Notes under the pieces: generated by a model
The model's input: only the letters and a program-made list of their open reading frames with translations
The model's database searches: none
What the model was told of the DNA's origin: nothing
Assembly (NCBI RefSeq): GCF_026571515.1
Contig: NW_026854825.1
Coordinates: forward strand, 62,001-126,000
Reading direction: 5' to 3'
From: Ruditapes philippinarum
Lineage: Eukaryota
Length of the DNA: 64,000 nt
Shown here: in pieces, positions 2,081 to 64,000 of the stretch
Numbering within the stretch: the first letter of the stretch is position 1
Layout of the letters: each line of letters begins with the position of its first letter
Program-made: the position numbers and the translations under genes

Positions 2081-5000
2081 TCAGAAATCTAACTTGTGGA
2101 TTTGCTTCAGCATCTGAAAGCCGACGTTCAATTTGAAAGACAAACATTTCAAACTTTCATCACCCTCAATCTTTAAGTCCCCAGCAAACAACATTGACAG
2201 CGCTTTATGCCTAATATCAGTATGAGTCGATTCAATTAAGCAAATAATTGACCCACTATCTCCCCTCTTCGAAAATACCTCATCAGAAGTGCCTCTGTTT
2301 GTGACAGTTGTCCGACTGCTTTCAAGATTTCGGACATAAACTATGGTATTTCTAGGCACAACATTTCCGTGCGCGGTTTCATCAGTGTTAAGACCGCAAC
2401 ATTGCATATCTTCTAGCGCTTTTATATTTGCACCATTCAAATGTATACGGTTATCTTCACGTGCATAAATTGTTACAGTTGGTGTGCATTGATCATTACT
2501 CTCAGCTGTTATGATTGCTGATTCTTGAAAACTAATATCGTCTGGTGTGTTTTCACCATGGTTATATGGCAATCTGACCGTTTTGGCTATTTCTGGCATT
2601 TTTTCGTCAAAGGCATCTCTGTCATTTGACATAATTTGGTCTTCACGATCTGGTAAGGATGATTGGGTTTGAGGCGATGATTGATCATTTATACAAGTAA
2701 TAGGGTCAAACGTTTCCTGAAAGTCAGCTGGAAGGTCAGGTTGAATGTCTATCATAATCAAATAATCTTCAGTTTCCACTTCAAATATACTGTAGTCAAC
2801 TGAAACGATAAATCCTTTAGTGAAACCACTTGCTGCTCCATACTTAAAAGCAGGGATTCCAACAATCATTTTCGGGTACTCGTCAGAAACAGTGGCCATA
2901 GTTATACACTCATTACATTCCTTCAACGTTTGTTTGCATAGCTCTTGTGACTTCGGAATCACTTCCAAAGCAGCAATATCTACATGTTTAAGTTCACTAT
3001 TTTGACGATTTATTACTTTTGGAGAGGAACTGAATGGACATGGGCCATCTTTATCTATGAACGTTTTTTCACCAACGACGTGGGCACATGTTAGACCATG
3101 GACTTTTCCATCCTTTGATATTATAAATCCACCAAGTGTCCCGAATTTCCCTTTATCTCGTTGAAATAGACGATCCCCTGGTTCAAAGGAAAGACCCATT
3201 TCCTTATGTTTCTTTTCAATGTACCTCATTACAAACTGCTCCTTAAAATCATGTTTGTGCATCTGTAAAGATATGTCTGACCTCAATTGTTTTAATTTGT
3301 TTGATAGTTTTTCTTGTGGTAAATCTGCCAGTGATGTGAGATGAATATCGTCAGTTTCAGCGACAATTGCATTGTTTTCATCTTGTTTGACATCATCACT
3401 TTTGCTTACCAAAACTGCATCTTTATCCACATGAATCTCTAGCTGGCCATAAACGGTACCTAGGCCATAAACCCCTTTTAGACTGAAAACAAAATTAATA
3501 AAAGTGCATATTCTGTTTGTCGAATAGTACAGGCAAATGTTTTCTTTCAGACTTATTTTTTATTTGAAAGATTCGGTATGTTGTTACCTCACTTAAGTGA
3601 AATTTTATATATGTATAATATTATGCTTCTAAAACAATTTTCAAACATCGAAGAATATGTAAATTATGTACTGCAAATATTTGTCAATATTATATGTAAT
3701 CATAAAAATATATGCATTCGTTTCTTATTGAAAGATTTGACTTAGACTTTATGGAAAATAAATTTCTAATTACCTCCCTTTATTAACATGAAATGTAAAT
3801 TTCGGTAATATCTATACAAATAATGCTTTTTGGAACTTACAATATTGATAGATTTTCATTTGAGCACATTCTTATGATATAAAACCATAAAAATGTGTTA
3901 CAGGATCTTTAAGGATTTAAATGAAGCTATCAATTATATGCTACGGAAAACATAGGAATGATGATATGATTGACACATGTTTAAACATCTGGTAATGGAG
4001 AAATCACTCAATGAGCAATGAACTTAAATGCCTATTATGCATCAGAAATTCTTTTATTTCTCAAAAGATTCTCATCTTTTGTCCTGTATAGTTTTCAAAC
4101 AGTTACTCATTATCAAATTATCTGAACCATCCTTTGCTTCTGTCTGTTACCTCTTGTTAATTAGTATATTTATAATGATTTAGCGTTTTGCATAGAAGTC
4201 AAAGTACTTCTTTGCTAACATTTTATTTCTTATGTGGCAAATAATTTCACAATCAGCACTACTTCCTTCAAGCGATTAACATATAGCATGTTCTTAATCC
4301 TTTATTTAAACATTATGAAACTCATGTTCGCCCTTTCTAAAGAAGGAAAGATTAATTCATTTCTGAGGCATAATGTGCCTGTTAAGCTAATAAGTAAAAA
4401 GTGAAGTCTCAATTCGATTTATTCTGTTCATCAGAGATAATGAAAAGTGAAGCATCTGTCACGCCCCCCATAGTACCGGTTCAAGTGTTACTCAATCTTC
4501 AACATAATAAAAAGAATCGATGATGCCAAAGAACCAGAAAAAAATATCAAGATTTTAGTTAAGTAAAACTTTATTTATTCCAGAATGCACTAGAAATTAA
4601 TATAGAATGAATGCTTCTCAATGATGGTCCGGGCAACGTCAAAAGTTATATTAAATTGTATGCCTCAGAGATGCGCCTTATAACAAAGATTTTGTGTACT
4701 TATGACTACATTTGTATGCATAGTATATAGTATACAAATGTTCTTAATTAATCTTAAATCTTATAATTTAAGTTTTCTAAGAGTGTTATACTTACTTTAA
4801 TAAATCTTGCCTAAGTTCTTTAGGTATTGATTGCTGTTGCTCAGCAAATGACACTAAATTTGCAACATTTAGTTGTTTCAAATATCCATGAGCTTCAAAC
4901 GCCATTTTTCGAATGATAGTTGATAGCTTTTGCATTGATTGGAGCTTTTTCTCAACATTTGCTGTGACAGGCTCTACGTCTGATTTAAAAGCATAATAAA

Positions 5001-6736
5001 GAAAATCAAACTTTTTTGTCTTTTTTGAGTATACGGTACCATCGAGTAATGCTTCATACACATACTCAACCAATGATCTAATATGATGTTGCGTGTTTTT
5101 TGAGATTGCGTTTGATAGTGCTTCTTCTAATTGCACTTCATACAGTAGACCGTTACAAATCCATACTTGCAGACCATATTTCCTTGCAAAAAGGTTGACA
5201 ACAGAACAGCGAGCCACATGACACAAAGACTTCAGAAGACGATCATATATCTCGGTGCACGCCTTTTCCTTTTCATCTGTATTTATTGTAACTTCAACAT
5301 AAGCTCTTGCATTTCGCAAGAAGTCTTTTAGAGAACAAACAACCGATTCTGTCTCAAACACATGAATAGGTTCCAAACAAACGTCAACGTTTATTGGTTC
5401 AAATCGTTTCAGATGGTAATATATATTAATGAATCCACTAGCAAGATATTTTTCCAGTGTATCAGAAATAGTTGTTTTCAGGTCGCAGGCAATTGGGTTA
5501 ATAAAAATACTATCTTGCTCATTGAAATACTTTTCCAAATCACCATAAAGTGCAGCAAAAACAGAATCTTGAAATCTAGTGATATCTTCATTTGTTAAAA
5601 CTCTGGTCGTAGCACAGCAGATGTACACAAAGATCTTACGCTCTGCCTTTTTGGCATCAAAGGTTAAAGCTTTGAATTTGGATCTTATTTCCTAGAATTA
5701 AACAGAAAAAACAAATCACTTGACTTTACTTTGTTGTGAAAATAATATACTTTGTACATATGCATGATTGTATGAAAATAAGGAACCTTTTACCAAGTTT
5801 AACTACTAAGAAGAATTTTACAATTTTTAATAAAATAATCGTATTCGACAAAATTAAATTGTATCGCTAGATATACCTGAAAGTATCTCTCAGTTAAATG
5901 TTCTAGGTCTATATGAAGTATGACAATTCCAAGTCTATGTACAGGGGAATCTGGTAACTTCGAAACAGGATTGAATACGAGATCATCTTTATCTATGTCC
6001 CTCTTCCCGATCACTGATAGTTTAAGCCCACCTTCGAATTCATGTTTTGTTTGTTCAATTTCTCTCATCAACTTGTCATCATGGAAACATTTTGGTAGGG
6101 CACCTGGATGATACAGAAATACTAGGACTGATATAAACATAATAGGAGAGGGAAGTACCTCGAAAAGTATTAATAAAAACAAACAAACAAACAAACAATA
6201 AATAAATACAATGAAAAAATAGATACATAAATAAGTTGAAAAGTGTGACTTGGTTGGATTAAATATCTTCTTTTTTATTTCTTGGGGTGGGGGTGTATAC
6301 GCCAGAGGTCATATGGAGACTTTACTGGTTGAGGAAGACCTTACATTCTTAAATGAGGGATTTATCTTTATAAATTCATGTACATATGACATATAGGATA
6401 ATATGCTTAAAGTATGATGATCTTTCAACTTGAATGTTGTTATACAAATCATAACATAAAATGTTCAATTATGCATGATTTTAGGAAAAACCATCGTCGG
6501 ATACCCACGGTTGATTTACATGTAACATGACATAACATGTAATCAGTATTAATGGTTAGGCCGTGGATAAAAACTTAAATACGTGTATAATATTGGCCCA
6601 AATTATTCTTACCTGTCACTCTGGTGAATCTTGGTACGAGATCTTTATACCGCCGATGAAAGTGGTATACACGAGGGTACACATCGAAATTACCGAACAC
6701 GTGAACGTACTCCTGTATAGGTATTAAGACACTCAT
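2081..6736 (-). CDS. Array copy 1: pseudo-P-loop/helical domain + NAL1-like trypsin-fold serine protease, 882 aa; complement(join(2081..3482,4796..5691,5877..6103,6613..6736))
   Basis: All introns GT-AG; exon lengths 124+227+896+1402=2649 nt keep one frame (phases 1,0,2). Starts MSVLIPIQEY..YPRVYHFHRRYKD. Last exon begins LKGVYGLGTVYGQLEIHV and carries GTLGG, LTCAHVV (His), VDIAAL (Asp), FKYGAASGFTKG, FSKRGDSGS (Ser). An acceptor at 6761 and a donor near 6985 suggest an upstream non-coding exon. Confidence 0.88.
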
Positions 6737-8554: not shown

Positions 8555-8816
8555 TATGGCTGCTTATAATTTCTAATCGTTTTTTTTTCTTTCTTTCTTT
8601 TTTAAATTCAGAACAACTTAATGATGGCAACTTTGTGTTACTTATGAATATTGTCACAACATGTGAGAGAATAAACAAATTTCGTCGCTTTGCGCCTCGA
8701 TCTGTTCATTCTCTCACATAATGGACAGTTTTTGGAGTTTCTCCATAACATAAAAATGTATGAATCAATAATTCTGACAAAAAAAAAAAAAAAAAAAAAA
8801 GACGAACAACCCCTCC

Positions 8817-8961
8817 NNNNNNNNNNNNNNNNNNNNNNNNNNNNNNNNNNNNNNNNNNNNNNNNNNNNNNNNNNNNNNNNNNNNNNNNNNNNNNNNNNNN
8901 NNNNNNNNNNNNNNNNNNNNNNNNNNNNNNNNNNNNNNNNNNNNNNNNNNNNNNNNNNNNN
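8817..8961. other. Assembly gap (145 N)
   Basis: Run of N characters. Confidence 1.
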
Positions 8962-12693: not shown

Positions 12694-12731
<38 letters not shown>

Positions 12732-13322: not shown

Positions 13323-16300
13323 TCAATCTGATGGGAAATGAAGTTGTAAATTTCCTGCAGCATTCAGACTATCAATACCTTCACGCAACAAAAACGACGT
13401 GCAATAGTTGTAATCTGTAAACCCAAATTCACCTTCAGCAAGCATGGATACTGCTGTAACATGTTGGGCACCTACATCAGACATACAGATTATTGACCCA
13501 CTATCTCCTTCGCAAGCATAACTGTTGTCTTCACAACCCGGCATTGTTTCTATAAGCAACAGCTGATGTGTTACATCCCTATTCGCTCTGCTGTAGTCTG
13601 AAGAACACACTAGTCCGTCTGTGAACTGCGAACCAGCCCCGTGTTTGTACACCCTTCGATCACTTTCAATAAGTTCTTGAGCGAAACCCATATACAGCTC
13701 TGTCCTCATATAGTTTCCGTCTTCGTCTTTTAAATTTGTTCTGCAACGCATTTTATCTTTTTCATGTATCACTTTTACCGCAGCAATATCAATTAATGTG
13801 CCACGTTCTGGGGGGATTTTTGTCTCTGGTTGGCTAACTGCAAAAACACGCCTATTTCCATCGAATACATTATGAATCGCATCATGTTCTGCATGGACAA
13901 CATGTGCACATGTAAGTACATATATTTCACCGTCTTCATTTCGGACAAGCCCACCAAGAGTGCCCCGAAATCTAAAATCATCTGTAGGACATTCGCATCC
14001 AATACTTGTACCCGTGTCTAAACAGAATGGTTGGGGCTTCTTCAGAACGATATCTACTCTGTATGGTTTGAGGAATTTGAACTTCTGGATTATTTCACAA
14101 ATCTGCTCCTTTATTTCTTTCATCTTCTGGATACTAAGGTTCTCTAAATGAATTTCGACTCTGCCATAAATTGTTCCGATTCCATACACACCGTCAACTC
14201 TGCAATAATCAAATAGTCAAATATTGATTGGATGTTGTGATTTAGTATGGTTTATTATAATGAGCAATAAAATGTTACAAATCAGTTTTGGCAAAATGTC
14301 TTGGCTTCAACGAATAAACATAAGGACTTATTTAGCACGATTGTGTTTACATTTTCCAAATAAATATTTTTACTTTAAAACAGCATTCGTGTGTGAAATA
14401 AGAACATACCCAAAAATTGCTTCCTTTAGTTCTCGGGGAATTTCCGTCTGACTGGGTATCAAATCATAACCGTGTTTCATTTTTGAGCTTTTTATGTAGC
14501 CATCGATCTCAAACAACATTTTCCTCATAGTGACTGCAAGACGTCTTGTAGAATTCAGATGATCTTCGAAAGTTTGGAACTCACCCTTGATATCATCTCG
14601 TACAACGTATGCAATGAAAGCAAAATTTTTGCCAGGAAAATAATAATGCTTGTGTCCGGCCTTTGTAGCATTCAGCATATCCTTGCACGGGGTTTCCATC
14701 TTTGATAAGTGATATCGTGCGTTTCTTGAAACACTTTCTTTCATTTTGTCGTCAAACTCGAACTGATGGGCAAGTTTGTTGCACTCATCTTGTGATAAGC
14801 AATATTTGCCAGCCAGCGGTGCCATAACAGCACATCTGATGACTTCCATAAATCTTGTAAGCGTAATTTCAATGAATGACATCTGATCATTATTAGACTC
14901 AAGCATATCGACAAACCCTAAACCGTTCTTCAAAAAACCTTGCATTGCGGTTATAAGCTGATCTGATTCAATTATGTCGAATTCACTTGCATCGAAATAT
15001 CTATCACCAATGATGTCAAGTAGATGTATCATCAATCCATTGAAGCCTTCCATTAATTCTCTCTCTATGATATCAGATATTCTTCTACTTATCTCCGAAC
15101 TATCTTTCACGTCAACTATCATGATGTTTTCATCATCTGTGCTAATGTCGGGTGTTTCTTTTTGTGCTAACAACTTGATTTTTTCACAAAAAGATCTTTT
15201 ACGTTTGCTTTCGATACCTTTTGTAGCACCATTTGTTTCGCAGACAACAAGCGGTCCAAGAACAGATGACCGGAAGCTCTTAGCTTGTGATTCCAAATAT
15301 TTGAAAGTGTCTTGTACTTTCTGCAATTGAAGAAGATCAGATACATTATAAACCACCTTCACCATGCAATACCTTTACATTGATAAATTATCAATTTATA
15401 AGCATTAAAGTTGAAAATAGAGAAGGTTTTGAAAATATAAGGAAATTTTGGATTTCAAGGTTTTTTTTCAATTACTAACATTTTAACGCGTTTCACAATG
15501 AATCATTTAAGTGTTTAAACGTTAGACATCCAACATTTTGTTACAAGAGGTTCACTTTGCTTATTCATTGGAGCATGAAATGCTTGACTATAACATATTA
15601 AAGCAGAATGCCTGCAGTTTTAAGCTTCAGTTTCTTGAACATTTTTGAAACTGTTTTTACAAATGAAATATTGTGAAGAGAACAAATAAAGTCAATTCAC
15701 ATTGGAAGCGGCACTTGCAATACATAAATTATACATCAATAAAAAGAAAGTCAAAATATGCAATATAACCTTTATTGCGTTAGTCACGCAGTAGAAATGA
15801 TATTATGGTGATATATAAGTCTACTGCATGATCAGCTCTTACATGCTTATAACATGTAACTTATAATTTGAATTTTGAATCTTTTAACGTTTCTTAAAAT
15901 ATTTTTTCTCAAGTTTGATTTTTTTTAAATTTGTTTGTTCATCTGTAGGCACGCATCTTTTAAAAACAACACCATTGATAAAGCGTCCTATTAATTAATT
16001 AATTAATTAATTAACGAGGACTTAAGTAAAATGCTCTACACAGAAACAACTATCACATTAAATATCAATCAATCACCTGCAAACTTCCATCTGTAAAGTC
16101 TTTGATCTTTTCATAACAAATAACAACCGTAAACTGATTCTTCTGCTGTAGGTCTGAGCTTAACTTTATCGGAGAAACAGTGGAACCTCGTGCACGATCA
16201 CCTTTTAATGATTGAGTGGAAATGACCAATTTTTCGGCATTTACATTCTCACGCCCTATGACAACCAGTCGAAGATCATTTTCTATCTTGCATGATCTAT

Positions 16301-17127
16301 CCGTTATGTTCTCGTTCAATTTTGGTGAATATGGCCATTTACCTGAAAACAATATCCTTCATGTCACAAAGATTTTGTTGTTATCTGTTAAGTTTTATTG
16401 CATAGTTAACAATTAACTTAAGAATGACTTTTTCAAACAGGTCTTTTTTAAAATGTCAACAATTATAAAGTGTGTTTACCAAATGCAATATGAGACAGTC
16501 ATATACATGTATTATTCTAAAAAGCATATATAACTTATTGAAAATAAAAAGCCTTTCGCAAAAATAACAATTCATTACAAAAGTTATGCAGACACTCTCT
16601 GTCTGGCAATAGGCGAAGATAGCTAAGTTTACACTTAGAGTATCAAGACAATGATACTGTAGGCAAAACCGTATCATACACTTTGACTGTAAAATGTGAG
16701 GTTTCATGTAAACTTTTTTAAAAGTTTTAACTGAAATATAAATGTGTTTGCTTCAAATTCTACCGAATTTTATCTTGTCACACAATATGCTCCAAACACA
16801 TTATAACATTAATATCCTAAACAAAAAACTAATATTTTTGAGCATCTAAAGTAAGATTTTTATTCTTAAACTGAAGTACATATTTGGTAGCAAAAGGAAC
16901 AATAAAATATGAAGACTATTTCCATTTGTACGTATAAAAGTCTGACCGTGAATAAACAGAAGCCTAAAATGAAAAGAATCAATTTTTTAGTAACAAATTT
17001 AAAAGAAACAATTCATACTTGTTACTTTCTGTAATCTTGCGTGGACGTCCTTGAATCGCTTTTGGTAGTGATGTGCCCGAGGATATGCCTTCCACGAGCT
17101 CAGCTCGTGCGAATATGCGCCTATCAT
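13323..17127 (-). CDS. Array copy 2: pseudo-P-loop/helical domain + NAL1-like serine protease, 720 aa; complement(join(13323..14199,14410..15320,16077..16342,17019..17127))
   Basis: GT-AG introns; 109+266+911+877=2163 nt, phases 1,0,2. Exon 1 reads MIGAYSHELSSWKAYPRAHHYQKRFKD (too short for the ORF track). Protease motifs GTLGG, LTCAHVV, IDIAAV, YKHGAGSQFTDG, YACEGDSGS. Confidence 0.9.
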
Positions 17128-23398: not shown

Positions 23399-26300
23399 TC
23401 AGTTAATCCCTGTCGGCATCGAAAGTTCTACTCCATTTGAATGTTGTTTGAAAACTTGAAAAGCAGTGCTCAAAAGGAACGATAGACACAGCGATGAATC
23501 CAATCCTTCTACATTGAATCGTCCAGCACTCGTCATAGTTACAGCCTCAATGATTTTATCGTCCCCCTCGAATGTAGAAATACAGTTGATTGACCCACTG
23601 TCTCCCTCCTTCGCATAAAATTCACCGTCACAAGACTTAGTGTCAATAAGCACTATGTAGCTTTTGGAATCTTGCCCATCAAACATGCTATAGTCAGAAG
23701 AGCAAACGATACCTTCGGTAAAGCCTGTCATTGCACCATACTTGTAAACGTATTTTCCGACAAGATCACTTGGACAAGCTGTAGATAGTTTTGATGTTCT
23801 TAAAATACCATCATCATCTTTTAGTAGTTGCATACACCTCTGGCGTACATCATCACATACTGATATTGCAGCGAAGTCAATCCATGAGAGCTTTGTGCTA
23901 CCAAAACGTACAGTCATCTCCGGTGAGCTCTTTCCAAACATATGCTGTTGGAAAGAATCATCTTTAATATAGACGTCATGCTCACCTGCTGAACCCTGAA
24001 CAACATGTGCGCATGTCAATCCAAACAACTGGTTATCATCATTACTTGCAAACCCTCCCAATGTCCCTTTTCGGAAATTACCTGTGTCTGGTGAAATACT
24101 TTCAAGTGTATTCCCGGTTTCACACTGCCACATAACTAAATCTACAGGCTCTTTTAATACTTCTCTCAACCGATATGGTCGGTGAATGTTCATATTTCTG
24201 AAAACCTCTGTAATACCATTCTTTACATCGTTAAGACGTGTCTCTGTTGTTTTCTTTAAATGGATTTCAAACTCACCATATACGGTTCCAACTCCAAACA
24301 CCCCATCAAGTCTGGAAAAGGATTAAGGAACCAGCTTGTTAAGTAAATGATATTCAGCAAATGATAATATTCAATACAAAAACACACCCAAACTGTGAGA
24401 AAATCATACGCTGGACTGTTTTACTTTTCCAAATTATTTACATATCGTTTAAAAGATATTTAAAATACAAAAAATTTAGAAACCAATATTGCTTTACATA
24501 TTAATGTTACTAAGAGTGTTGAATAAGAATTCAATGCCTCGAGTCAAGGCAACATTACAAAAAGATATCTAAAAAGGAAATAAGTTCTATCTAAAGTAAA
24601 GAACTAGAAGGAGAATTAAGTATGATACTAACGTTAACAGTTTTTTTCTTAATTCTGCCGGAATGGGTGTTGTTTCAGTATGTTTTCGTGAGATATCGCC
24701 TTCTCGGACAATTGATTGTTTGATATAACCTCTTATCTCAAACAACATCTTTTTCATAATAGTTACGCCATGCTGGACAGAAACCAGTTCTTTTTCAAAA
24801 AGTGCTGTTTGTTCCTTGATATCATCCTTTAATGGGTGTGCGATGAACAGAAACTTTCTGATAGGAAAAATGTACTGTTTATGTTTAATTTCTGCTTTTG
24901 AGCAAAACTCCTCAATTTTTTTGAGATGGTACCGGGTATTTCTTGAAATACTGCTTTTCAATTTCTGTTCCAGGTTCAATTCATGGGCTAGCAAGTGGCA
25001 TGCATCTTGAGGCAAGCTATATTTGAGAGATACAATGGCAACGATAGAGCAACGTATCACCTTGACCAGAGAGTCTAAGACGATTTCAATAAAGTCATCG
25101 TCCTTGTGCATGTCCCTATCATCGATGATCCCCCAAACATTCCTTAGAAACCCCCGTACAGCACAGACGAATTGTTCATTCTCTAATGTGTCAATATATT
25201 TCAAATTTGGACCTGATCTCTCTGTCGCAACCTGGCTCAAATGGTCTTCAATTTTCATGAATTTGGTTACAAGTTTTGATTCTATTAAAAGAGATATTTT
25301 GCTGCCGAGCAATCCGACATTTGGCCCTAAGATAATTCTGTCTGAAGATACTTCAATACCGTACAGTTTTCTAATTTCAAAGATCATTTCATTGCAAAAT
25401 AGTCTCACTTCTTCATCAGATTTGGGTGCGTTTGTTTTACAAACAAGGAAAAGGTTTTCTACTAAATCAAGTTTTGCTCTATTTGAAGACGCCATGAAGT
25501 GACCGAGAGTATCAACAACATCCTGAAATAATATATTTCTGTAAACATATTGTGCTAGAGTATGTTATTTTTTGAAAACAAAATTTCAATAACACTGAAG
25601 GAGAAATCGTTCGTAAGTTTAAGTTTATATATCTTGATACCGAGTTGCTTCTTCTCTTATACCTAGTCATTGATATTTTCCACAGAAACAACTTTATTGC
25701 CATATTACTTAACCTAATACATACAGAAAGTAAACATGTTGTCTAAAAGTGTAGCAGTTAATCACTTTGCGTATTGAAAATTGCTATCCACTATTCATCT
25801 ATTTCATCTTTGGATGACACTAGATTACTTGCCCATAATAGTCCTTTGAAAAGTTCTAATATACCGACAAGATAATGTATTCAACAATTTAAAGAGAAAG
25901 TTACCTGAAGCCTCTGTGTACCATCGTCTTTTGTATAACACACTGCTACCGTCATTGCAGCATGTCCTCTTTCTGACAACTGAGAATTGATCGACTGCCG
26001 TCTAAATGGTTCATCTGTTACTATGATATCATTTTTATTTAAATCGTCCTGTCCAATGACAAGTATTTGCAGGGCTGTCTCAAGGTTTGCACACAATTCT
26101 CCGAGCTCATTCTCCAGTTTTAAACTTCTAAACAGATCTGGATATGGTGATTTATCTGGAAATAGTACATTGACAATGTTTTAGAAAAAGTGAATGCTTG
26201 AATATTTACTTTCTAGTGAGCATTTAAATAGAAAATATTTTCGCATAAAATGTAACAATCAACACTCATTAAAGAATATTCTTTGTACGTAAATAAATAA

Positions 26301-26513
26301 AAAGTACATATTAGACACATGCAGACATGATTTACAGACGCAACATCATATAACGTTACCTGTCAATAATTGAAGAAATAAAATCTTTGACATACTTGTA
26401 AGGTTTTTGAATCTTTTGCACACGTCCCTGAAACGTTTCTGGAAATACTGAACACGTGGATAACATTCCCAAGTGTTCACAACATGAGAATACTCCGAGA
26501 TCTGTTGGGCCAT
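23399..26513 (-). CDS. Array copy 3: pseudo-P-loop/helical domain + NAL1-like serine protease, 723 aa; complement(join(23399..24311,24633..25522,25905..26155,26396..26513))
   Basis: GT-AG introns; 118+251+890+913=2172 nt, phases 1,0,2. Exon 1 MAQQISEYSHVVNTWECYPRVQYFQKRFRD. Protease motifs GTLGG, LTCAHVV, IDFAAI, YKYGAMTGFTEG, YAKEGDSGS. Confidence 0.9.
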
Positions 26514-47843: not shown

Positions 47844-50800
47844 TCAGTACATTTGCCGTCCGCTGTATTCAGACGGAACATGTAACTGTATCCCAGATGG
47901 TGTATTTCTAAGTACTTCTAAACCTGTTCCCAAATGGAATGAAAATGAATGTTCTTCTTCTTGGTCTTGAAGTCTTAATTCTCCGGCACTCAGCATAGAC
48001 ACAACCTGAATTGTCCTTTTTTCTAAATACGGCATGCAATTTACAGAGCCGCTATCTCCTCGCATTGCGTATTCAACAGTACTGATATCTGGTAAAGGGT
48101 CAATCAATATTATATATGCATTTGGCATATACCCAATACGGTAGTTTGCAGAGCAAATGATGCCTTTAGTTAAGTCTGTAGCAGCACCGTATTTAAATAC
48201 GTATTTTGACTCTAGGTCAGCAATACTTTCAGTTGAAAGAACGGCATTCTTTAACATACCGTCGTCATCCTTAAGGTATTTGGTACACATTGGGACAACT
48301 GAATCAAAAACCTTGACAGCAGCTAAGTCAACAAGACGAGTTGGGAGACTGCCAGTCAGAACTGTTCGGTCAGGAGAGCTTGTACCTAACAACGTTCTAT
48401 TCCCAGTACCATCAGGTATGTACACTTCGTGATCCTTTCCATCAGAAACATTTACGACATGTCCACATGTCAGAGCAAATAATTCGTTATTGGTGCCGTC
48501 TGCAAACATTCCTAGGGTACCTGACTGATATCTATTGGGATCACTTGGTGTCTGTGTTTCTAACGCTATTCCATGCTCTACTTGACCTCCTGCTAGCGGT
48601 GTTGCTTTCTTTATAACTCGTCGGATGCGAATTGGATGTCTTATTCTATAATCAATTATAAGAGCCTTTACCAATTGTTCAGCCGTCTCGTTTTCGACAT
48701 GGATTTCCCACTCACCAAATATTCGTCCCATACCATACACACCTTCAATTCTAAAACATATATTTCACAACATATAAAATTACTAGGTATCATATCTAAG
48801 TCAATACACTAGAATTTCAAATCGACAAAAATGTTTTTTTTTTCTTTTTTCTACGATGTCTAGTTCAGGGATTATATACAGGTTTTTAGAGTAATCTTAT
48901 TCTTAACAATTGAAGATATAATAAACTAGTTCAATTGGCTGAAGTAAAACTAATTCTAAAACAATTGCGATAGTTCTTGTTATACATTAGAATAACAATA
49001 AAAGTAGAAGATAATCAAAGAACTAGTATACATAATATGCATATATTAATTGAGAAAACCATTAAGGATGCGATACAAATATTCGGATTTATTTCAAAGT
49101 ACTTACGCAAATAACTCTTTCCTCAGTTCCTCGGACCTTTCTGTTTTGCATTCTGGGATACTCAAGTCTTCTTGTATGAATGGGGACAATTTAATATTCC
49201 CTTTAATTTCAAAGATCATCTTCTTCATAACAATAACATTTTTTTGCAAAGCTGCAAGATGTTTCTCGAAGTTTAGGACTGCACTTTTGATGTCGTCGCG
49301 TAGCGGGTAAGCAACGAACAAAAAGTCTCTACTTGGAAAACTGTACCATTTGTTACCTTGCTTTATAGCTTCCTCTAAATCGCAAGAATGCTTTTCCACT
49401 TTACTGAGATGGTAACGTGTGTTTCTTGAAATATTTTCTTTCATTTTTTCGTCCAGCATCAATTCAAACGCAACCTGATTACAGACGTCTTGTGTAAGAT
49501 CAAACTTCATTGACAGAGGTTCCAGGATAGCACATCTAATAACGCGTACTATATTTTTTAAAAGAACATCTTCAAACTTCAAAGACTTGCTTCTGCTGTC
49601 CGCTAATATGTCAACAAAGCCCATCCCGTTTTTCAAAAATCCCTGTAGTGCGTTTATTAATTTATCTGACTCTACAACATCTACTTTCTCCATCAAAAAA
49701 TTGCTCACACCTTTAATAAAACCCTCTAAATGTGCTTTCATGGTGCACAATCCGTCAATAACCTTTGCTTCAAGTATACCTGAAATTTTAGTGCTTATTG
49801 TCTGTTTCTCTTTAGAAAATAGTATCTGACCGAGTTGAAGTTCTAACTGAAATTTTTCTTTGACATCATTTTGTACCCTTTGTTGAAATGAATCCAATTT
49901 CGATTGATCGCAAGTGGTCTTCGGCTGACAAAGGATGAGTATTGAGTCTGGAGATACCGTCATTTTCTTCAGATGTTTAGACGTGAACTCCTTTACTATG
50001 TCTAGAACTTTCTGAAATATTGAGGAAATTCAATTTTGATGCATAAAAGTTTTAATACGTTAGATATTGCCTTTGCGTTCCGTTTTCCCTCTTTCATAAT
50101 TGCGTCAGCATTTTCAAAAGGAAAGGAATTTATTTAAATTCAGAAACGAATTTTGGTTATTTATTATAAAAATTACAAATGGCCGAATGAGTTATTTAAT
50201 GAAGTACTATTTGACACTTTATGCATGGTTACAACTTTCTGTAATTGACGTTTGTTCCAAAAATAAACAACACAATTATAATACGTTCGATGCATTATTC
50301 TCACACTTTCATTTAATCCTAAAGAAAAATAACACTAGCAGAAAAAAATGTTTTATGACGAGTTATTATAGCGTTGGTTCTTTATAGCGGGGGTCACGCT
50401 TGACTTTATCTTATTTCTAAAGTTAAGCACGCCAGGCGAAGTAAGGAGTACTCCTTCATTTTTTTGTTAACAATTAAAATTAATAATTCATAAGTTTAAA
50501 GTAACAAGAATAAATCGCCATGTCAGTTTTGACATAAGCGTCTTTTCTCCAAGAATGCAAAACATTCATTAACTACAACTTGCATTTGTTATTTAATGAT
50601 TCTCGGAAAGATATAAACTCTTTGATGTATTTCTTTTTAATAATTATCAACTTTTTAGACATTGGATTGAAAGAATGCAGTGTGCTGCAGTGGTACCCTA
50701 TCAGATAATGTTTGCTTTTACGTACAAAGTGTGATTACAGGGCGGAGCGAGAAGCCATTTGGCGTCTGGTAAGCTGGTCCAATATACGAATTGGCAAGTA

Positions 50801-53800
50801 AACAAAGTATCTTTAAAAAGATACTCGAAAGAGGTAAAACTGCTTTTATTTGCACAGGTTATTTCGGAGATTTGTTATAGCATTTAATGATTGCATCTAG
50901 GAAACACTGCAAGATATGTTTCTAAAAGATAAGTGTACCTTACACTGACGTATTCATGTACACATTAATATATGCTTTTATTTCATGCTTTCCAGTGTTT
51001 TATTATAATATATCAGATGATTATATTCTGATAAACCACTAGTGAAATTTATAAAATATAATTTTCACTGTAGCCGGACTATATCAGAATGCGGATGAAA
51101 AAAAAATCATAACTAAATGGATTAACAGGCAGAAATAGACGCCGTCATGCGTTAATTTTGCTTCTTTAGGAAAAGAAAGTCGATGTCACCTTACATCATG
51201 TTAAAAACGTAACAAAATTAGAGAAATTTAACAGAACTATATTTCAAAATTGATGATGTGACGTCATGATGTGATGACGTCACATAGGAGAATGCGCGAC
51301 GTTACGCGGCAAAATCAGTAAAAAAAATACTTAAAATCACTTAAAAAGCATGAAATAAAAAGAAAATTCATTTGTTTTACATGTAAGATTGAAATATATT
51401 TCATTCGTGAACACCAGCTATTATATTTTCACTCGTGGCTACGCCACTCGTGAAAATATTGCATCTGGTGTTCACTCAGTGAAATTATATTTCAATCTTA
51501 CATGCAAAACAAACAAATATCCTCTCTATAATATGAAATTAGGTGCTACATATGACACGGAAAGCATATGATTTAATAACCAGAGTAAGAATTGTATATA
51601 TATAAACTTGTATATATATAAACCAGATCTTTCTTTGACTTCGTAGATAATGAATAAATGCAGGTATTTTGTAGATTTAATAGATATGAATGAATTGATG
51701 CTGTTCATAATATCATCAAACTTTTCCGATTGTTTCCGAATATCATGTCAGCCATTGTTTTTATTAGTCTCTAATCAGAATTGTTGTTTCTTACATTGTT
51801 AAAACGTGGTTATTAAGCAAAATGGATATTAAAAAACTACTTTTATATTAATCATCGTAACTTAAGTTCTTATGATTATAATTCATTTACTGATTTTCTA
51901 CATCTATCGGAAGTGTAGTTTTGTACAGAAGACTGCCGCGTCTTCTGGCAACAGTCTGAAGCATCATTAAATGTTGCAAAATGTTTTAATGGGAGAAAGC
52001 CATCACATTTCACAGATTTAAAATATCCGAAAAAATTAAACTAGAAAGTTATTTCAGAAACTCCTGTAGATAAATTGATTTAGACATGTATACGTTTCAG
52101 AAAAATCCTTTATATTATTTTACATTGTACTTATTTTAGAATGGCCAATAGGAGTCATTATTTTTCAGTTTGTAATTTTAAAATGACCAATGAAAATCCT
52201 GCTTATATTCAGTTCTTCCCTGTAAATTTTACCGGAAGTCAAACCCTTCTCTGACAGACTTCGTGCTCAACATACCGAACAAGTAAAGAGCGGTACGATA
52301 GATTGAAAATAAGATGTCATTATGGTAAAAATCAAAGAGCTTCGAGCTCTGTGGTGTTTTCTGATCTTTGCAATCTAAATTGTACTTTACATCTGTATGT
52401 ATTTTCCTGTATAAGTTTATATTGAAATACTATAATTCAGCTTGCAACCGAGTTGCAGCGACTGCGTTTAGATTTTTCTGCTAAAATAGTTTGAGTTCGA
52501 TACATTTATGTTCATTTTTTATGACAGCCACACATTATCAATAATTAAGAAAGAATGTTAAAATCGCTAAAAGGACCCACATAAAAAATTAGTTGCCACG
52601 ACTGAGATTTGAACTCCAGACTTCTCAAATTGTAAAATCGCGTGTAACCCCCGGGGCACAGTGATGTTAAATGAAATCAGTCAGAATAAACACATACTAT
52701 TCAAAATTTAGAATTTCAATTCATGGTTTGTATTTCCTATTAATTTCTAGGTATACCTGTTGTTTAACACTGATGCTAATGATTTAGCGGAAATCTTTTC
52801 GCCCAAACAGTCCGACATATATATATATAATTATTTCACTACTCGACAATCAGATTTAATTGTGTAATACGCGCAGAAGTCTTCGGTAATGGACAACGCT
52901 AAAATGGCATTTTATTTACGTGGATTAAAAAAAATCGTCGACTGCCCTAAATTCGTCCCTGTTCTAGAGTCAACCTCCTTGCTTTATTTTTCAGAAAGTC
53001 TAAATAACAAATGTTCATTTAGGGGCGTTTAATTCCGATCACAATAATCCGAAGCTTTACGGAAATAGCCGAGCAATGCTCATTGATTGCAATGATATTC
53101 ATCCGCGTAATGTTTTGTGTGCATTTATTGACAATTCTATAAGCCAAATCAACTTTTAAACTTTGAAGCGTTGTAATTTGTTAGATACTTGTAACAAAAT
53201 AAAAATATTTCTTCCATTTACGTCGCTAGTTTAAAGCTGTTTTGAGAACTACTTATTGTTAGGTTTGTTTGTCTCCATCTTAATGTGTTGGAATTAGATT
53301 TGGCACGTAAAATTATGAGTATTTAGATTACACTAAGTGTTATCTTGAGTTGAAATGATAAAACCATCTCCAAGGTCGGTTAAACTTTGTCATGTGTAAC
53401 ACTTGAACTAATTTTGGGTTTAATCTAAATCAAATATGACTAAAGTTCAGATCTACTTATATCTTCCATGAAGATCTGATGACCACCGTATATGTGTTTC
53501 GCCTTCTTTATTATTCGGATTTCCCGAAAAAGCTATTTTTATGCCCCGGTCGGGTCACATATTCACGGATAATGCCACGGAAGAGCTACGGTCTAATCGT
53601 TCACGGATTACTACGGAAATGTGAAATTCCGTAGTCCGCTACGGTTCCAGTACGGACACACAACGGTATGAGTACGGATTTACCATAATCTCCCCGGAGA
53701 TATACGAATTGTTACGGACCGACACGGTTTGATACGGAGCGACACGAATCAGGACGGACGTACTACGGTTACACTACGGTCTGCTACGGTATAAGCACGG

Positions 53801-56324
53801 GTTAGTACGAATAAGTACGGTCTGATACGGAGAAGAACGAATTGATACGGAGAAGAACGAATTACCACGGATCTATACGGACCTAATACATCCGTCTACA
53901 ACCTCTTGCATGCTCATTTTCAAAATGCCTCACAAGAAAACAACACCTAGAAAACGAATTGCACAGTTCAATGATTTTGGCGGAGAGGATTCGGCCTAAT
54001 CGCGTCCGACCCCCTGAGACACATCTGGTCCGATTAAAGTGAATTTCGTGAAGGACGCTGGGTCCTTAAAAAGTTAGGAAATGAGAACCTCATACTAAAC
54101 ATGAAGGGGTCTTCATAAAAACCCATCTCTAGTCCACCATCACGTCTGTCTTCTCTTACCTGATTAGATATGGACTAGTAATAATTAATGAAAAATGTTG
54201 ATCAATACTGCTCCTCTTTTAATTTTAATAATTATCGTGAATGTTTATGTTTTAAAAATATGTAAAAAGCTTGTTAATTAATCTTATTATCACTCAAGGG
54301 CCAGCGTCCGAGGCTTATGCGACACCTCGTTTTATGTACATATTTATCCAATTTCACGATCCAATGCTTGTAAAATATCTAACATTACAATGTTATTCTA
54401 TTACTTATGAATTCTAGTACGATATAATTAATATATTTTGACCTCTATGCATGTCATCAAGCAGCCCGACCACTGCCTCCGCATTCTGAGCCATTTCAAT
54501 ATAAAGTTGCAGCCAGTTAATGGCAATTATTATTTATTGAATGTTCTCGCAAAAATGTCTGTTTTTAACAAGAAGGTAGTATTTATACCCTTGAAAAAGT
54601 ACATGATACTTAATTCATCCGTACTAAACAGTAGTGGTCCGTTCAATTCCGTACTGTTTCGTGTTGCAACGCAATAAACCGTAAAAGACCGTGCTAATCC
54701 CTGCCTCTCCGTGGTACAACGTATTACGATCGTGGCTTTCCGTGACAATGCCGTATTTATCCGTATTAAAACCGTAGCTTATACGTAGGTAACCGTACAA
54801 ATACGTAGTTCTCCGTACCAAACCGTGGAAATCCTTGACAAGTTAGTGGACTACGAATCAGTACGGACTAGTACGGTTTTCGTACGGACCAGTACGTATC
54901 AGTACGGTTTAATACGGACTAGCAGGGATACGCTACGGTTGATTTTTCCGTAGCAAATTTTTGTGCATGTTCAAAAATTGTCAAGGATTGCTACGGATAT
55001 TCAAGGACTACTACGAATGATTACGGTTACAATACGGAGAGCTACTGACCAGTACGGGTAGCTACGGACGATGCCGGAATTAATCCGTGGCTCTTCCGTG
55101 GGCGTATTCCGTGAATATGTGACCGGGGTATTAGCCATGCAATCAAACCGGGTTTTACAGACAGGCATTAGAAGAAGTATCAAATACCGTTATATTTGGA
55201 AGTTAAACAAATTGTTAATTTTTGTCAGAAAGAAAATGTTTGAAGTAATTTTTAACAAATCAACTTGAAATAATAGAGTTATTTTTTCACAGGCAAGATT
55301 GTTTTGCCAGTTTACCTGTCGGCTATATGGACAACGTCATGTTTATTCTCGAAATTGTGAAAATTACCAACTTATTATTGGTTTTCCAAGTATAAAAATT
55401 AGAAACCGCATCACTTTCAAAATAATGAAAGCTAATCAATGATTGGTTGTTTGAAATACCACGAGAAGGTGACCTATGGGTGGATGTCAGATCCTAATGC
55501 ATAGCGTTATTTAGGAGCAAATTTTAATCAGATTGATCTAATTCAACTTTAATGCAATCCATCTCAGTTTAAGCCTAGTCTATGACTTTGGTTCTATAAA
55601 TAGGCATATAGTTATATGCAATTAGCCCTTAGTGTTAAAATACAATAGTTATATACCTTCAATCCCTTTTCATCAATATCCTTTATACTAATGTGCAGCA
55701 AAACTACGGTAAATCCATGCCCTTTGACTGCTGCCTTTCCGATCTTTTTCCCCCAGAAAGATTTCTTTACGCTCTCTGACGGACGCGGTTCCTCTGAGGC
55801 TATAACCAAATCGTCTTTGTCAATATTGTTTTTCCCGATGACATATACGCCCAGTGGCTTTTCAAGCATGTCTTTCAAATGATGCGTCCTATCAACTACC
55901 TCGCTTTTCGGCTTGAATACGATAGGATATGCACCGTTATCTATAAGAAAAAATCTGCGTTAGTTATTTAATTACATTGTAGATAGGAAAAGCAAAACGA
56001 ATATATTTAATAAGGGATAAGAATCTGAAGTTTAGAAAAATGTAGCGTTATGAACTGAAAAGATGATAATAATCTTCATCATCTAAATACGCTCTTCATC
56101 ATTGTTAAATAAAGCAAATATTCGTCTTTAAGTTAACAAATTAAAAAGTCTAAAAGATTTTGGACGAAATGTCAATAACACGAGCTCACAAAATTTAAGG
56201 TAAGTTAAAACTTACCGATAACATTTGTAAATCGTTTGTGTACATCTTTGAATCGTCTTTCGAAAAAGTAAACCCTTGGATAAACCCACGTGTCAAAAAC
56301 ATTTTCGAATTTTGAAATAGCCAT
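47844..56324 (-). CDS. Array copy 5: pseudo-P-loop/helical domain + NAL1-like serine protease, 734 aa; complement(join(47844..48750,49107..50011,55657..55940,56216..56324))
   Basis: GT-AG introns; 109+284+905+907=2205 nt, phases 1,0,2. Exon 1 MAISKFENVFDTWVYPRVYFFERRFKD. Protease motifs GTLGM, LTCGHVV, VDLAAV, FKYGAATDLTKG, YAMRGDSGS. Intron 2 is expanded to 5.6 kb by repeats. Confidence 0.9.
50970..51525. mobile_element. Non-autonomous element ending in a ~145 bp imperfect palindrome (51371-51515)
   Basis: TTTGTTTTACATGTAAGATTGAAATA..GTGAACACCAG..ATTTTCACTCGTGGCTACGCCACTCGTGAAAAT..CTGGTGTTCAC..TATTTCAATCTTACATGCAAAACAAA; additional inverted pair TTTTATTTCATGCTTT / AAAGCATGAAATAAAA. Confidence 0.65.
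52330..53250 (+). mobile_element. Dispersed repeat family A, copy 3 (intron 2 of array copy 5)
   Basis: Matches 42336-43250, with a ~170 bp internal insertion near 52915-53080. Confidence 0.7.
53543..55130. mobile_element. ~1.6 kb non-autonomous DNA transposon with TIRs and dense TACGG/CCGTA subterminal motifs (PIF/Harbinger-like, tentative)
   Basis: Left CCCCGGTC(GGGT)CACATATTCACGGA..CCACGGAAGAGCTACGG; right CCGTGGCTCTTCCGTGG..TCCGTGAATATGTGACCGGGG. No transposase ORF seen. Confidence 0.8.
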
Positions 56325-62897: not shown

Positions 62898-64000
62898 TCA
62901 ACACAGAACAAAATTCTTTCCACAGTGTTCCCTTAGTGTGTCCAGAACTTCTTTCATATTAATTGATATACATTTTTTGCTTTCAGAACCAGATTCCGAC
63001 GGGTCCTTGAGTATTAAATCGCCGGCGGTAACCATGGAAACCAGTTCGATTTCGTTTGTCTGAAGATTTCTCCTGCATACGACTGCCCCACTATCGCCGT
63101 GTGTTGCAAATACTTGAGAATTATAACTAGGTTTACTAGACAGAGGTTGACTTAAAATTTCATTTGTATTTCTTGCATCACCCAACTCACTGTCATGAAT
63201 ATCTTGACCGTTTTGTTGCTCCGGTCTAGGTAAAAATACAAAACTTCTTGAACTTTTCTCTAATGACATAACATCGTCTATTGAACTTGCTGCCGCTTGT
63301 CCGACACATGTTAAATCTGATATATCAAAGACATTGCTTGTGTCAGATCCGGAAATGTCCAGTGTATTAATTATATCTTGGGAAATCTGAATATCGTCTT
63401 CGGGTTTAGGAGGCGAAGGCAATTCAACTAAACCGAGTAATATATCTTCTTGGGTAACTGGTGCGGAAGATTCAATTAAACTAGGTAACATGTCTTCTTG
63501 GGTAACAGGCGAGGAAGATTCAATTAAACCGGGTAAATTGTATTCTTGGGTAAGAGGCGGGGACGATCCAATCGATTCTTGTGTAAGAGTCCGCGATTGA
63601 TCATTTTTCATTGCAGTAAATAAACCTTTTGAAACGATTGGCAATGGCTCGACAAGAACTACATGATTAGGTAAGGTAAAACTGAAATAACTGTTTGAAG
63701 CTATAATTCCTCGACTACAACCAGTTGATGCACCATATTTAAACACGTAACTACCAACAAGGTCCCTAGACTGCTCAGTAGCTATTCTGCCAATTTTGTT
63801 GTTACCAAATTCATCTTGGAAATAAAAGCTGCACATGTTTAGATTGTCTTGAGAAACCTTTATTGCAGCAATGTCTGCAAATGGTATATTACTCTCATTA
63901 ACGTTTAATGTCATTGCAGAACTGCTGTAACCAAACAAATGATTTTGAGTTCGAATGTACACTTCGTGCCACTTTTTATCATGAGGATGAACAACATGTG
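62898..64000 (-). CDS. Array copy 6 (5'-partial): terminal exon encoding NAL1-like serine protease with a large internal insertion
   Basis: Frame is open to the window edge, where it reads (A)HVVHPHD (catalytic His), then ADIAAI, FKYGASTGCSRG, FATHGDSGA, LVSMVTAG. Clearly paralogous to the last exons of copies 1-3 and 5. Confidence 0.88.
   Translation of the reverse strand, partial: HVVHPHDKKWHEVYIRTQNHLFGYSSSAMTLNVNESNIPFADIAAIKVSQDNLNMCSFYFQDEFGNNKIGRIATEQSRDLVGSYVFKYGASTGCSRGIIASNSYFSFTLPNHVVLVEPLPIVSKGLFTAMKNDQSRTLTQESIGSSPPLTQEYNLPGLIESSSPVTQEDMLPSLIESSAPVTQEDILLGLVELPSPPKPEDDIQISQDIINTLDISGSDTSNVFDISDLTCVGQAAASSIDDVMSLEKSSRSFVFLPRPEQQNGQDIHDSELGDARNTNEILSQPLSSKPSYNSQVFATHGDSGAVVCRRNLQTNEIELVSMVTAGDLILKDPSESGSESKKCISINMKEVLDTLREHCGKNFVLC
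63400..63590 (-). repeat. In-frame 48-bp (16-aa) coding tandem repeat inside the protease domain of copy 6
   Basis: SSPPLTQEYNLPGLIE / SSSPVTQEDMLPSLIE / SSAPVTQEDILLGLVE / LPSPPKPEDD; GGGTAA recurs at 63452, 63500 and 63548. Confidence 0.9.

What the first reader, a model, noticed from the sequence alone, without database searches (positions are those of the whole stretch)
2081..64000. Tandem array of at least six diverged genes encoding an unusual cytosolic scaffold-zymogen protease: candidate undescribed invertebrate signalling/immune system
Seen: six same-strand paralogs spaced ~8-16 kb apart. Copies 1-5 share a 4-exon structure and intron phases (1,0,2) despite strongly diverged sequence. 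Five copies keep a His-Asp-Ser triad. None of the five complete proteins has an evident signal peptide or IVGG activation N-terminus, so they are not conventional secreted animal S1A trypsins. Established: the GTLG..TCxHV..DxA..KxGxxTxxTxG..GDSG..S/GMLxxG pattern is that of plant NAL1, fungal Ssy5-like and bacterial trypsin-like proteases. Intracellular trypsin-like proteases fused to sensor/oligomerisation domains are known effectors in bacterial defence (e.g. gasdermin-associated proteases). Inference: a ~420-aa regulatory region controls a zymogen protease, and the expansion, divergence and truncated member resemble caspase/NLR-type immune clusters.
Basis: partly seen in the sequence, partly recalled or inferred. 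Interest (0 to 1): 0.92.

Follow-up and report, generated by a model that had tools for sequence, protein, structure and literature searches.

The report
Clam array of NAL1-like intracellular proteases
A bivalve genome carries an old tandem array of seven expressed genes for uncharacterised cytosolic proteins whose C-terminal serine protease most resembles the plant protease NAL1, one array member being a conserved protease-less version; the family is undescribed, and an immune role is possible but not shown.

Summary
The minus strand carries six paralogs. A seventh lies about 12 kb before the window. Each has four exons with intron phases 1,0,2, giving in-frame models of 882, 720, 723, 482 and 734 aa. 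Transcript contigs from three studies join all four exons of copy 3 at the predicted GT..AG sites. The assembly gap at 8817-8961 is intergenic.

Full-length "uncharacterized" homologs occur across bivalves and in Lingula. Each window copy has a closer ortholog in other clams, so the array is old, not a recent burst. Copy 4 is not a wreck. Protease-less proteins ending at the same point exist in Mercenaria and elsewhere in this genome.

A modelled homotrimer passes its controls (0.53 against 0.01). The immune link rests only on rare Death, nSTAND3 and TNFR fusions in relatives. Other unchecked first-reader notes in this scan describe similar proteases elsewhere in this genome.

Verdict: a real, undescribed animal family and a new variant of a known protease kind. 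Zymogen and immune claims are untested.

The parts
2081..6736 (-). Copy 1, complete gene, 882-aa model. The protease carries an insert of about 148 aa before the GDSG motif.
   Evidence: Exons are 6736-6613, 6103-5877, 5691-4796 and 3482-2081 (stop included). Intron phases are 1,0,2. The His codon is at 3080-3082. The Mercenaria proxy P0006 aligns on both sides of 2294-2737, which is the insert.
8817..8961 (.). Assembly gap (N run), intergenic between copy 1 and copy 2.
   Evidence: locates the N run. The nearest family exons are at 6736 and 13323. The gap was not read across.
13323..17127 (-). Copy 2, complete gene, 720-aa model.
   Evidence: Exons are 17127-17019, 16342-16077, 15320-14410 and 14199-13323, with phases 1,0,2. 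The triad is present, with His at 13902-13904.
23399..26513 (-). Copy 3, complete gene, 723-aa model. All three introns are confirmed by transcript contigs.
   Evidence: Exons are 26513-26396, 26155-25905, 25522-24633 and 24311-23399. Spliced joints are seen in runs X1, X2 and X5. The gene is colinear with Mercenaria XP_053401067.1 (P0006) at 46-65% identity. His is at 24005-24007.
31327..37918 (-). Copy 4, intact protease-less paralog, 482-aa model. Exon 4 encodes only the small beta-beta-alpha-beta domain and then a stop.
   Evidence: Exons are 37918-37801, 34846-34593, 32703-31805 and 31504-31327. No protease remnant lies downstream. Mercenaria P0191 (490 aa) and P0192 (485 aa) end at the same point. 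So does a paralog on contig C13348 of this genome.
47844..56324 (-). Copy 5, complete gene, 734-aa model, with a 5.6-kb intron 2.
   Evidence: Exons are 56324-56216, 55940-55657, 50011-49107 and 48750-47844. The triad is present in the TCGHV variant, with His at 48459-48461.
62898..64000 (-). Copy 6, 3' part of the protease exon. The exon runs on to window coordinate 64442 and the gene to about 72370, both outside the window.
   Evidence: The open frame of 514 aa spans contig 124901-126442. The His codon is at 63996-63998, with DIAA and GDSG motifs present. An insert before GDSG includes a 48-nt tandem repeat at 63422-63572. The upstream exons were found in L001.

Best explanation
The window holds six of the seven members of an ancient tandem array. 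The genes belong to an undescribed family found in bivalves and in the brachiopod Lingula.

The proteins are cytosolic and multidomain, about 720-880 aa long. From N to C terminus they comprise:
- an alpha/beta domain of about 230 aa with no conserved nucleotide-binding motif;
- a helical bundle of about 190 aa;
- a beta-beta-alpha-beta domain of about 50 aa;
- a PA-clan serine protease with an intact His-Asp-Ser triad, closest to plant NAL1 and to alpha-lytic-type proteases.

Most likely mechanism (inferred): the protease is gated by oligomer assembly, as NAL1 is. The small domain of one subunit docks in trans on the protease domain of the next subunit. The 420-aa N-terminal module controls assembly or substrate access. 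The conserved protease-less paralogs (copy 4 type) keep the N-terminal module and the docking domain. They would co-assemble as modulators, capping or poisoning the oligomer. The output would be limited intracellular proteolysis of signalling substrates. An immune or cell-death role is the leading guess, but only a guess.

Shown: gene structures, splicing of copy 3, domain order, triad, protease kinship, phyletic spread, age of the array, and conservation of the protease-less form.

Inferred: oligomer gating, the modulator role, and the biological process.
For: - Exon maps and frames.
- Spliced transcript contigs from three studies.
- AlphaFold model of the full-length proxy P0006, with pLDDT 84 and pTM 0.60, giving the four-part layout.
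- Catalytic His, Asp and Ser are invariant in 30 full-length homologs.
- Family size: 989 representative proteins at E<=1e-3 and 66 at E<=1e-30.
- Named members are all 'uncharacterized'. They come from Mercenaria, Mya, Dreissena, Mactra, Potamilus, Sinanodonta, Saccostrea, Crassostrea, Pinctada, Mytilus and Lingula.
- Each window copy groups with another species' protein.
- The protease-less form is conserved. A predicted Dreissena isoform also lacks the protease.
- The homotrimer model of the exon-4 product scores 0.53 against a best control of 0.01. The runs share at least 46% of contacts and the partner pLDDT is at least 76. That mark was reached by 21 of 30 solved homomers and 0 of 23 solved single chains. 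The interface joins the small domain to the neighbour's catalytic cleft.
- NAL1 trimers are likewise held by the interface between its pre-protease domain and its protease domain. NAL1 activity needs hexamer assembly: PMC12012508, read.
Against: - The trimer pass may reflect the model's memory of NAL1. It was calibrated on pairs, not trimers.
- No residue-level test shows that the small domain equals the ATP-binding domain of NAL1.
- The N-terminal module has no assigned fold, so its regulatory role is an assumption.
- No substrate, localisation, tissue or induction data exist.
- Only copy 3 has direct transcript evidence. Raw RNA reads of run X24 cover it only thinly.
- Immune-type fusions are rare. 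Among 37 long relatives lacking the N-terminal module, one has Death, one nSTAND3 and one TNFR_c6.
Confidence: 0.5

Rival explanations
1. Ssy5-like zymogen. The protein cuts itself between the roughly 420-aa N-terminal region and the catalytic domain. The N-terminal part stays bound as an inhibitor. A signal then removes it, for example by phosphorylation and proteasomal degradation. The freed protease cleaves latent signalling proteins.
For: - The overall layout is the same as in Ssy5: a large N-terminal region followed by a catalytic domain of about 300 aa.
- Some relatives pass Pfam's own threshold for Peptidase_S64: P0074 39.3 bits, P0131 27.5 bits and P0113 24.7 bits, against a cut-off of 23.6.
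- Copy 5 scores 20.8 bits.
- In the trimer model the small domain covers the neighbour's active-site cleft, as an inhibitory pro-piece would.
- Ssy5 biology is taken from PMC3145550 and PMC6761765.
Against: - S64 matches cover only model positions about 539-660, which is the second barrel of the catalytic domain. Nothing matches the Ssy5 prodomain.
- NAL1 is the closer relative by both sequence and structure, and it needs no cleavage.
- The conserved motif at the exon 3/4 junction is modelled as a structured beta-hairpin, not a linker.
- No cleavage data exist.
Confidence: 0.22
2. A non-immune regulatory protease family. Like NAL1 in plants, the proteins would trim or degrade transcriptional or developmental regulators. 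The array would reflect old subfunctionalisation, for example by tissue or stage, and not host-pathogen conflict.
For: - Every paralog has a conserved ortholog in other clams, and the paralogs are only 25-40% identical to each other. This is the pattern of long-maintained, distinct functions.
- NAL1 itself acts on FZP and TOPLESS-type regulators (PMC12012508).
- No immune domain is present in any window copy.
Against: - The same protease domain is fused to Death, nSTAND3 and TNFR domains in relatives.
- The family is confined to sessile marine or freshwater lophotrochozoans known for immune gene expansions.
- A disordered insert of 48-581 aa recurs beside the catalytic Ser in 19 of 169 family members, which points to diversification.
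- Sibling runs of the same studies hold almost none of copy 3's words, which may indicate strongly conditional expression.
Confidence: 0.25
3. Not a functional cellular gene family. The copies would be relics of a mobile element or virus, horizontally acquired bacterial proteases in decay, or assembly duplicates.
For: - The protease and small domain sit in one intron-less exon.
- The nearest non-plant structural relatives are bacterial.
- Repeats and unannotated ORFs fill the spacers.
Against: - Open frames are intact in all copies.
- Intron positions and phases are conserved.
- Transcripts are spliced.
- Orthologs with the same four-part layout exist in at least ten bivalve genera and in Lingula.
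- The triad is invariant.
- The copies are far too diverged to be assembly duplicates.
Confidence: 0.03

Closest known systems
Plant NARROW LEAF 1 (NAL1) serine protease (PDB 7Y77, 8PN2, 8HAU; Pfam Nal1_C PF25819)
   Same: - Both are intracellular, lack a signal peptide, and have the His-Asp-Ser order.
- Both have a small structured domain directly before the protease.
- The modelled homotrimer is held by contacts between the small domain and the protease, as described for NAL1 trimers (PMC12012508).
   Different: - Sequence identity is only about 18%.
- Window copies stay below Pfam's Nal1_C threshold, scoring 11-17 bits against 26.1.
- The N-terminal domain of NAL1 has 88 aa; here about 420 aa of unrelated, unassigned sequence precede the small domain.
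- ATP binding by the small domain was not tested.
- This is an animal lineage with a tandem array and protease-less paralogs.
Fungal Ssy5 signalling protease (MEROPS S64; Pfam PF08192)
   Same: - Both are cytosolic chymotrypsin-fold endoproteases with a large N-terminal non-catalytic region of similar size.
- There are partial S64 matches, above threshold in some relatives.
- The likely mode of use is the same: a signalling protease rather than a digestive one.
   Different: - Only the second barrel of the catalytic domain matches.
- There is no prodomain similarity.
- Autoprocessing and an SPS-type sensor partner are unknown here.
Bacterial alpha-lytic / streptogrisin-type proteases (S1E; e.g. 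Lysobacter L5 5MRT, NAPase 2OUA)
   Different: Those enzymes are secreted and disulfide-bonded, with a cleaved folding pro-region. The proteins here have no signal peptide and carry large N-terminal domains.
Protease effectors of STAND/Death-type conflict systems (bacterial trypsin-like effectors of Avs2, iSTAND and gasdermin systems; caspases in animals)
   Same: - Relatives of this protease are fused to nSTAND3 NTPase (P0133), a Death domain (P0072) and a TNFR repeat (P0126).
- The concept of an assembly-activated protease is shared (PMC8195603; bioRxiv 10.64898/2026.08.25.746987, as listed).
   Different: None of the window copies carries such a domain. No homology of the N-terminal module to STAND, Death or CARD domains was found.
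Vertebrate FAM111A/B
   Same: Both are intracellular trypsin-fold proteases with a long N-terminal region.

Membership tests
PA-clan (chymotrypsin-fold) serine protease | Double beta-barrel fold with the catalytic residues in the order His, Asp, Ser. | tested here: met
   [not shown]
NAL1 family | Protease domain closest to NAL1 by sequence and structure. | tested here: met
   [not shown]
NAL1 family | Pfam Nal1_C (PF25819) above its gathering score. | tested here: not met
   Window copies score 11.4-16.7 bits against a cut-off of 26.1. The best relative scores 25.3 bits.
NAL1 family | ATP-binding domain before the protease, and NAL1's own N-terminal domain. | tested here: inconclusive
   A beta-beta-alpha-beta domain of about 50 aa sits at the equivalent place. 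It contacts the neighbour's protease in the trimer model. No residue-level alignment or nucleotide test was possible. The 420-aa N-terminal part is unrelated to the N-terminal domain of NAL1.
NAL1 family | Trimer/hexamer cage required for activity. | tested here: inconclusive
   The homotrimer model scores 0.53 against a best control of 0.01. This supports assembly but may be memory of NAL1. Hexamer formation and activity are not testable here.
Peptidase S64 (Ssy5) | Match to the S64 model across both the prodomain and the catalytic domain. | tested here: not met
   Only model positions about 539-660 of 692 match. Window copies score 12.7-20.8 bits against a cut-off of 23.6. There is no prodomain match in full-length relatives.
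Peptidase S64 (Ssy5) | Autolytic cleavage between the prodomain and the catalytic domain. | not testable with these tools
   This needs protein expression.
S1A secreted trypsin/chymotrypsin | Signal peptide and an activation cleavage that creates an Ile/Val-Val-Gly-Gly N-terminus. | tested here: not met
   Exon 1 products have no hydrophobic segment and no such motif before the protease domain. S1A enzymes rank below NAL1, alpha-lytic and HtrA types.
FAM111 | Closest protease relative is FAM111. | tested here: not met
   [not shown]
P-loop GTPase (AIG1/GIMAP, dynamin/mitofusin) for the N-terminal module | G1 motif GxxxxGK[ST] and profile similarity to a G domain. | tested here: not met
   No conserved Gly-Lys-Ser/Thr motif exists. 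Only a partly kept 'V-I-G' strand is seen. hhalign of the N-terminal profile against ten GIMAP G domains of this genome gives probability 0.2%.
P-loop GTPase (AIG1/GIMAP, dynamin/mitofusin) for the N-terminal module | G-domain plus helical-bundle fold. | tested here: inconclusive
   [not shown]

The most novel reading that the evidence does not exclude
The family is a previously unrecognised protease arm of lophotrochozoan innate immunity or cell death, an analogue of caspase/NLR-type systems.
- The N-terminal module, possibly a dead dynamin-like GTPase, would sense a trigger and drive assembly.
- Assembly would switch on a NAL1-like protease that cleaves downstream effectors.
- Conserved protease-less paralogs would act as built-in decoys or brakes.
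- The variable disordered insert next to the catalytic Ser (copies 1 and 6, and 19 of 169 relatives) would act as a regulatory or bait loop.
Probability: 0.2. Interest if true: 0.85.

Novelty: new variant of a known kind. Interest (0 to 1): 0.6.

Why it matters
NAL1-type intracellular serine proteases are known from plants, and S64 proteases from fungi. An animal counterpart has not been described in the literature I could search. All database members are called 'uncharacterized'.

This counterpart has a new 420-aa N-terminal module. It sits in an ancient tandem array and has conserved protease-less paralogs. It also shows occasional Death, STAND and TNFR fusions.

If the family is an assembly-gated signalling protease, it adds a non-caspase protease module to animal intracellular signalling. 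It would also give bivalve immunology and aquaculture disease research a concrete, testable gene set. Crassostrea gigas has a member, LOC117687101.

It also offers an evolutionary comparison for how NAL1 cages are regulated.

Tried and rejected
- Single-sequence PDB search with the copy 5 protease found no hit. The profile searches were needed.
- The language-model atlas run on exon 3 alone gave only noise-level rows.
- hhalign of the N-terminal profile against GIMAPs of this genome gave probability 0.2%.
- Looking for immune domains in open frames upstream of five distant paralog loci of this genome found no Pfam match.
- Pfam on ten spacer ORFs of the window found nothing.
- Literature searches for the family, for NAL1 homologs in animals and for LOC identifiers found nothing relevant.
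Mercenaria synteny therefore rests only on a shared chromosome record and neighbouring LOC numbers.
- The careful tree search did not finish. The quick IQ-TREE tree of 48 chosen rows was used.
- Joined spliced proteins were not built or searched. Exons were searched one by one by reference, and the Mercenaria protein P0006 served as the full-length proxy.
- Rejected readings: secreted digestive trypsin, FAM111 member, mobile-element relic, and a recent lineage-specific burst.
Full report
**What is in the sequence**

The window is G000:C3312:62001-126000 of a 1.41-Gb assembly. It has about 32% G+C. Open frames on the minus strand fall into four homologous classes that recur in the same order:
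- a short first exon with the start codon and a conserved Tyr-Pro-Arg motif;
- a second exon of about 85 aa;
- a third exon of about 300 aa;
- a terminal exon of about 300 aa carrying a serine protease.

GT/AG sites with phases 1, 0 and 2 are present in all five complete copies. They give stop-free coding sequences of 882, 720, 723, 482 and 734 aa. A sixth protease exon starts at 62898 and runs off the window.

Fetching the flanks shows the rest of copy 6. It also shows one more copy about 12 kb before the window. Nothing further lies within 30 kb on either side. The array therefore has seven genes over about 85 kb.

The N run at 8817-8961 lies between genes, 2.1 kb and 4.4 kb from the nearest family exons. 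It was left as it is.

**Expression and splicing**

Contigs of three runs from three different studies join copy 3 at 24311|24633, 25521/2|25904/5 and 26155|26396. All three joints are GT..AG on the minus strand. One 2009-nt contig links exons 2, 3 and 4.

The runs are only guessed to be RNA. Intron-less contigs identical to this locus are, however, hard to explain otherwise. Raw reads of a declared RNA run cover the gene thinly.

Sibling runs of two of the studies hold almost none of the gene's words. This hints at conditional expression or presence/absence variation. Only copy 3 was tested.

**The protease**

Pfam gives only sub-threshold hits to Trypsin_2, Nal1_C and Peptidase_S64.

A profile of the terminal exon finds rice NAL1 as the only significant solved relative, at E 6e-5. 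A profile of 30 full-length homologs reaches E 1e-9.

I did not build joined proteins from the window. Exons were searched one by one by reference. The Mercenaria protein XP_053401067.1 (P0006, 730 aa) served as full-length proxy. It is colinear with copy 3 at 46-65% identity.

Its AlphaFold model has pLDDT 84 and pTM 0.60. The protease domain spans residues 487-730. Structural matches are:

|---|---|
| NAL1 (rmsd 2.9, 216 residues) | 21.4 |
| Lysobacter L5 and alpha-lytic-type enzymes | 20.3-17.7 |
| DegS/HtrA | about 16 |
| S1A enzymes | about 13-16 |
| FAM111A | 13.9 |

His, Asp and Ser are invariant in 30 homologs. They are present in six of the seven array members. The His codon of copy 6 is at window 63996-63998.

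There is no signal peptide and no trypsinogen-type activation site.

**The rest of the protein**

The model shows three parts before the protease:
- an alpha/beta domain (about residues 1-230);
- an all-helical domain (243-426);
- a small beta-beta-alpha-beta domain (431-477) at the start of the terminal exon.

No Pfam family matches the first 420 aa.

Language-model neighbours of residues 1-235 are all GTPase families. Their scores of 0.85-0.87 are lead level only.

There is no conserved P-loop. A profile comparison with GIMAP G domains of this genome is negative.

**Family, spread and age**

An exhaustive profile search finds 989 representative proteins at E<=1e-3 and 66 at E<=1e-30.

All 30 or so that carry names are 'uncharacterized' or 'hypothetical'. 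They come from Mercenaria, Mya, Dreissena, Mactra, Potamilus, Sinanodonta, Saccostrea, Crassostrea, Pinctada and Mytilus, and from the brachiopod Lingula.

Thirty-eight of the 156 proteins checked match the exon-3 profile of the window copies, 29 the exon-1 profile and 20 the exon-2 profile. Mercenaria has a set of at least ten such genes on one chromosome record, with neighbouring LOC numbers.

Window paralogs are 25-40% identical to each other. Copy 3 is 58% identical to Mercenaria P0006 in the protease. In a quick tree, each window copy pairs with another species' protein with support of 98-100. The array is therefore old and its members are conserved. Its divergence is not the signature of a recent burst.

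**The truncated member**

Copy 4 has intact exons 1-3. Its exon 4 encodes only the small domain and then stops. No protease remnant lies downstream.

Two Mercenaria proteins of 485 and 490 aa lie on the same chromosome record as the Mercenaria array. Both end within a few residues of the same point.

Another paralog on contig C13348 of this genome does the same. A second copy there lacks any exon-4 match.

A predicted Dreissena isoform also stops after the small domain. The protease-less form is thus a conserved class, not a pseudogene.

**Insert**

Copies 1 and 6 carry about 150 extra residues just before the GDSG motif. In copy 6 the insert is partly made of a 48-nt tandem repeat.

The same site holds inserts of 48-581 aa, rich in Ser, Glu, Asp and Asn, in 19 of 169 family proteins. 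The insert-bearing copy 1 belongs to a supported clade.

**Mechanism**

NAL1 is active only as a hexamer of two trimers. Its trimers are held by contacts between the domain before the protease and the protease domain (PMC12012508).

Three copies of the copy-3 exon-4 product were modelled together. The model reached a score of 0.53 against 0.01 for the best of three controls. The runs agree in at least 46% of contacts, and the partner pLDDT is at least 76. That mark was reached by 21 of 30 solved homomers and 0 of 23 solved single chains.

In this model, the small domain of one copy sits on the catalytic cleft of the next copy, near His106 and Ser242. The model supports binding but does not show it. 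It may also recall NAL1.

My best reading is an assembly-gated intracellular protease. The N-terminal module would act as regulator, and the protease-less paralogs as co-assembling modulators. The Ssy5-type zymogen model (PMC3145550, PMC6761765) remains a fair rival.

**Immune link**

The only direct hints are fusions of the same protease to other domains in relatives:
- a Death domain (Mercenaria P0072);
- an nSTAND3 NTPase (Mercenaria P0133);
- a TNFR repeat (P0126).

Other first-reader notes on this genome describe similar fusions. They are unchecked, and my own look at five distant paralog loci found no known domains. I rate an immune or cell-death role at roughly one in three.

**Limits**

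- The read tools allowed one locus only.
- No coordinates of the models could be inspected.
Its nearest named relatives are heterodont clams.

**Verdict**

The family is an undescribed animal variant of NAL1/S64-type intracellular proteases, with a new N-terminal module and conserved protease-less partners. The zymogen and immune claims are hypotheses. Interest is 0.6.

Noticed in passing
window 22700-22990: This short stretch just 3' of copy 3 has very high depth in all runs, up to about 970 in contig word depth and about 200 in raw reads. Many reads run on into unlike sequence. It is probably an abundant, transcribed repeat.
   Followed up: no
runs X21-X23: Sibling runs of the same studies as X2 and X9 hold next to none of copy 3's words, at shares of 0.00-0.04. 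The other runs hold 0.54-0.60. This may reflect conditional expression or presence/absence variation of this gene.
   Followed up: no
G000:C13348:244001-254000 (L023) and 228001-238000 (L022): Two more members of the N-terminal module family lie on another contig. L023 ends right after the small domain, so it is protease-less. L022 shows exons 1-3 but no exon-4 match.
   Followed up: partly
window 35526-36127, 40087-40896, 10122-10707: These are tandem repeats of 167 nt x3.6 (inside intron 1 of copy 4), 138 nt x5.8 and 145 nt x4.0 in the spacers. The ORF at 40706-41170 (+) lies within the 138-nt array and is probably not a gene.
   Followed up: no
window 33087-34223: A duplicated segment lies inside intron 2 of copy 4. 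Its open frames are 74-85% identical to each other. There is no Pfam match.
   Followed up: partly
window 8096-8563 (-): This is a 156-aa open frame with an ATG, next to the assembly gap. It has no Pfam match and its nature is unknown.
   Followed up: partly
window 26514 and 26552: One contig of run X1 leaves the genome at 26514, just upstream of the copy 3 start codon, with 22 unlike letters. This may be an alternative 5' exon. An in-frame ATG also lies upstream at 26552.
   Followed up: no
P0161 (Dreissena polymorpha XP_052222955.1): This predicted isoform X6 of a full-length family gene keeps the N-terminal module and the small domain but lacks the protease. Splicing thus mimics what copy 4 encodes in its gene.
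   Followed up: partly
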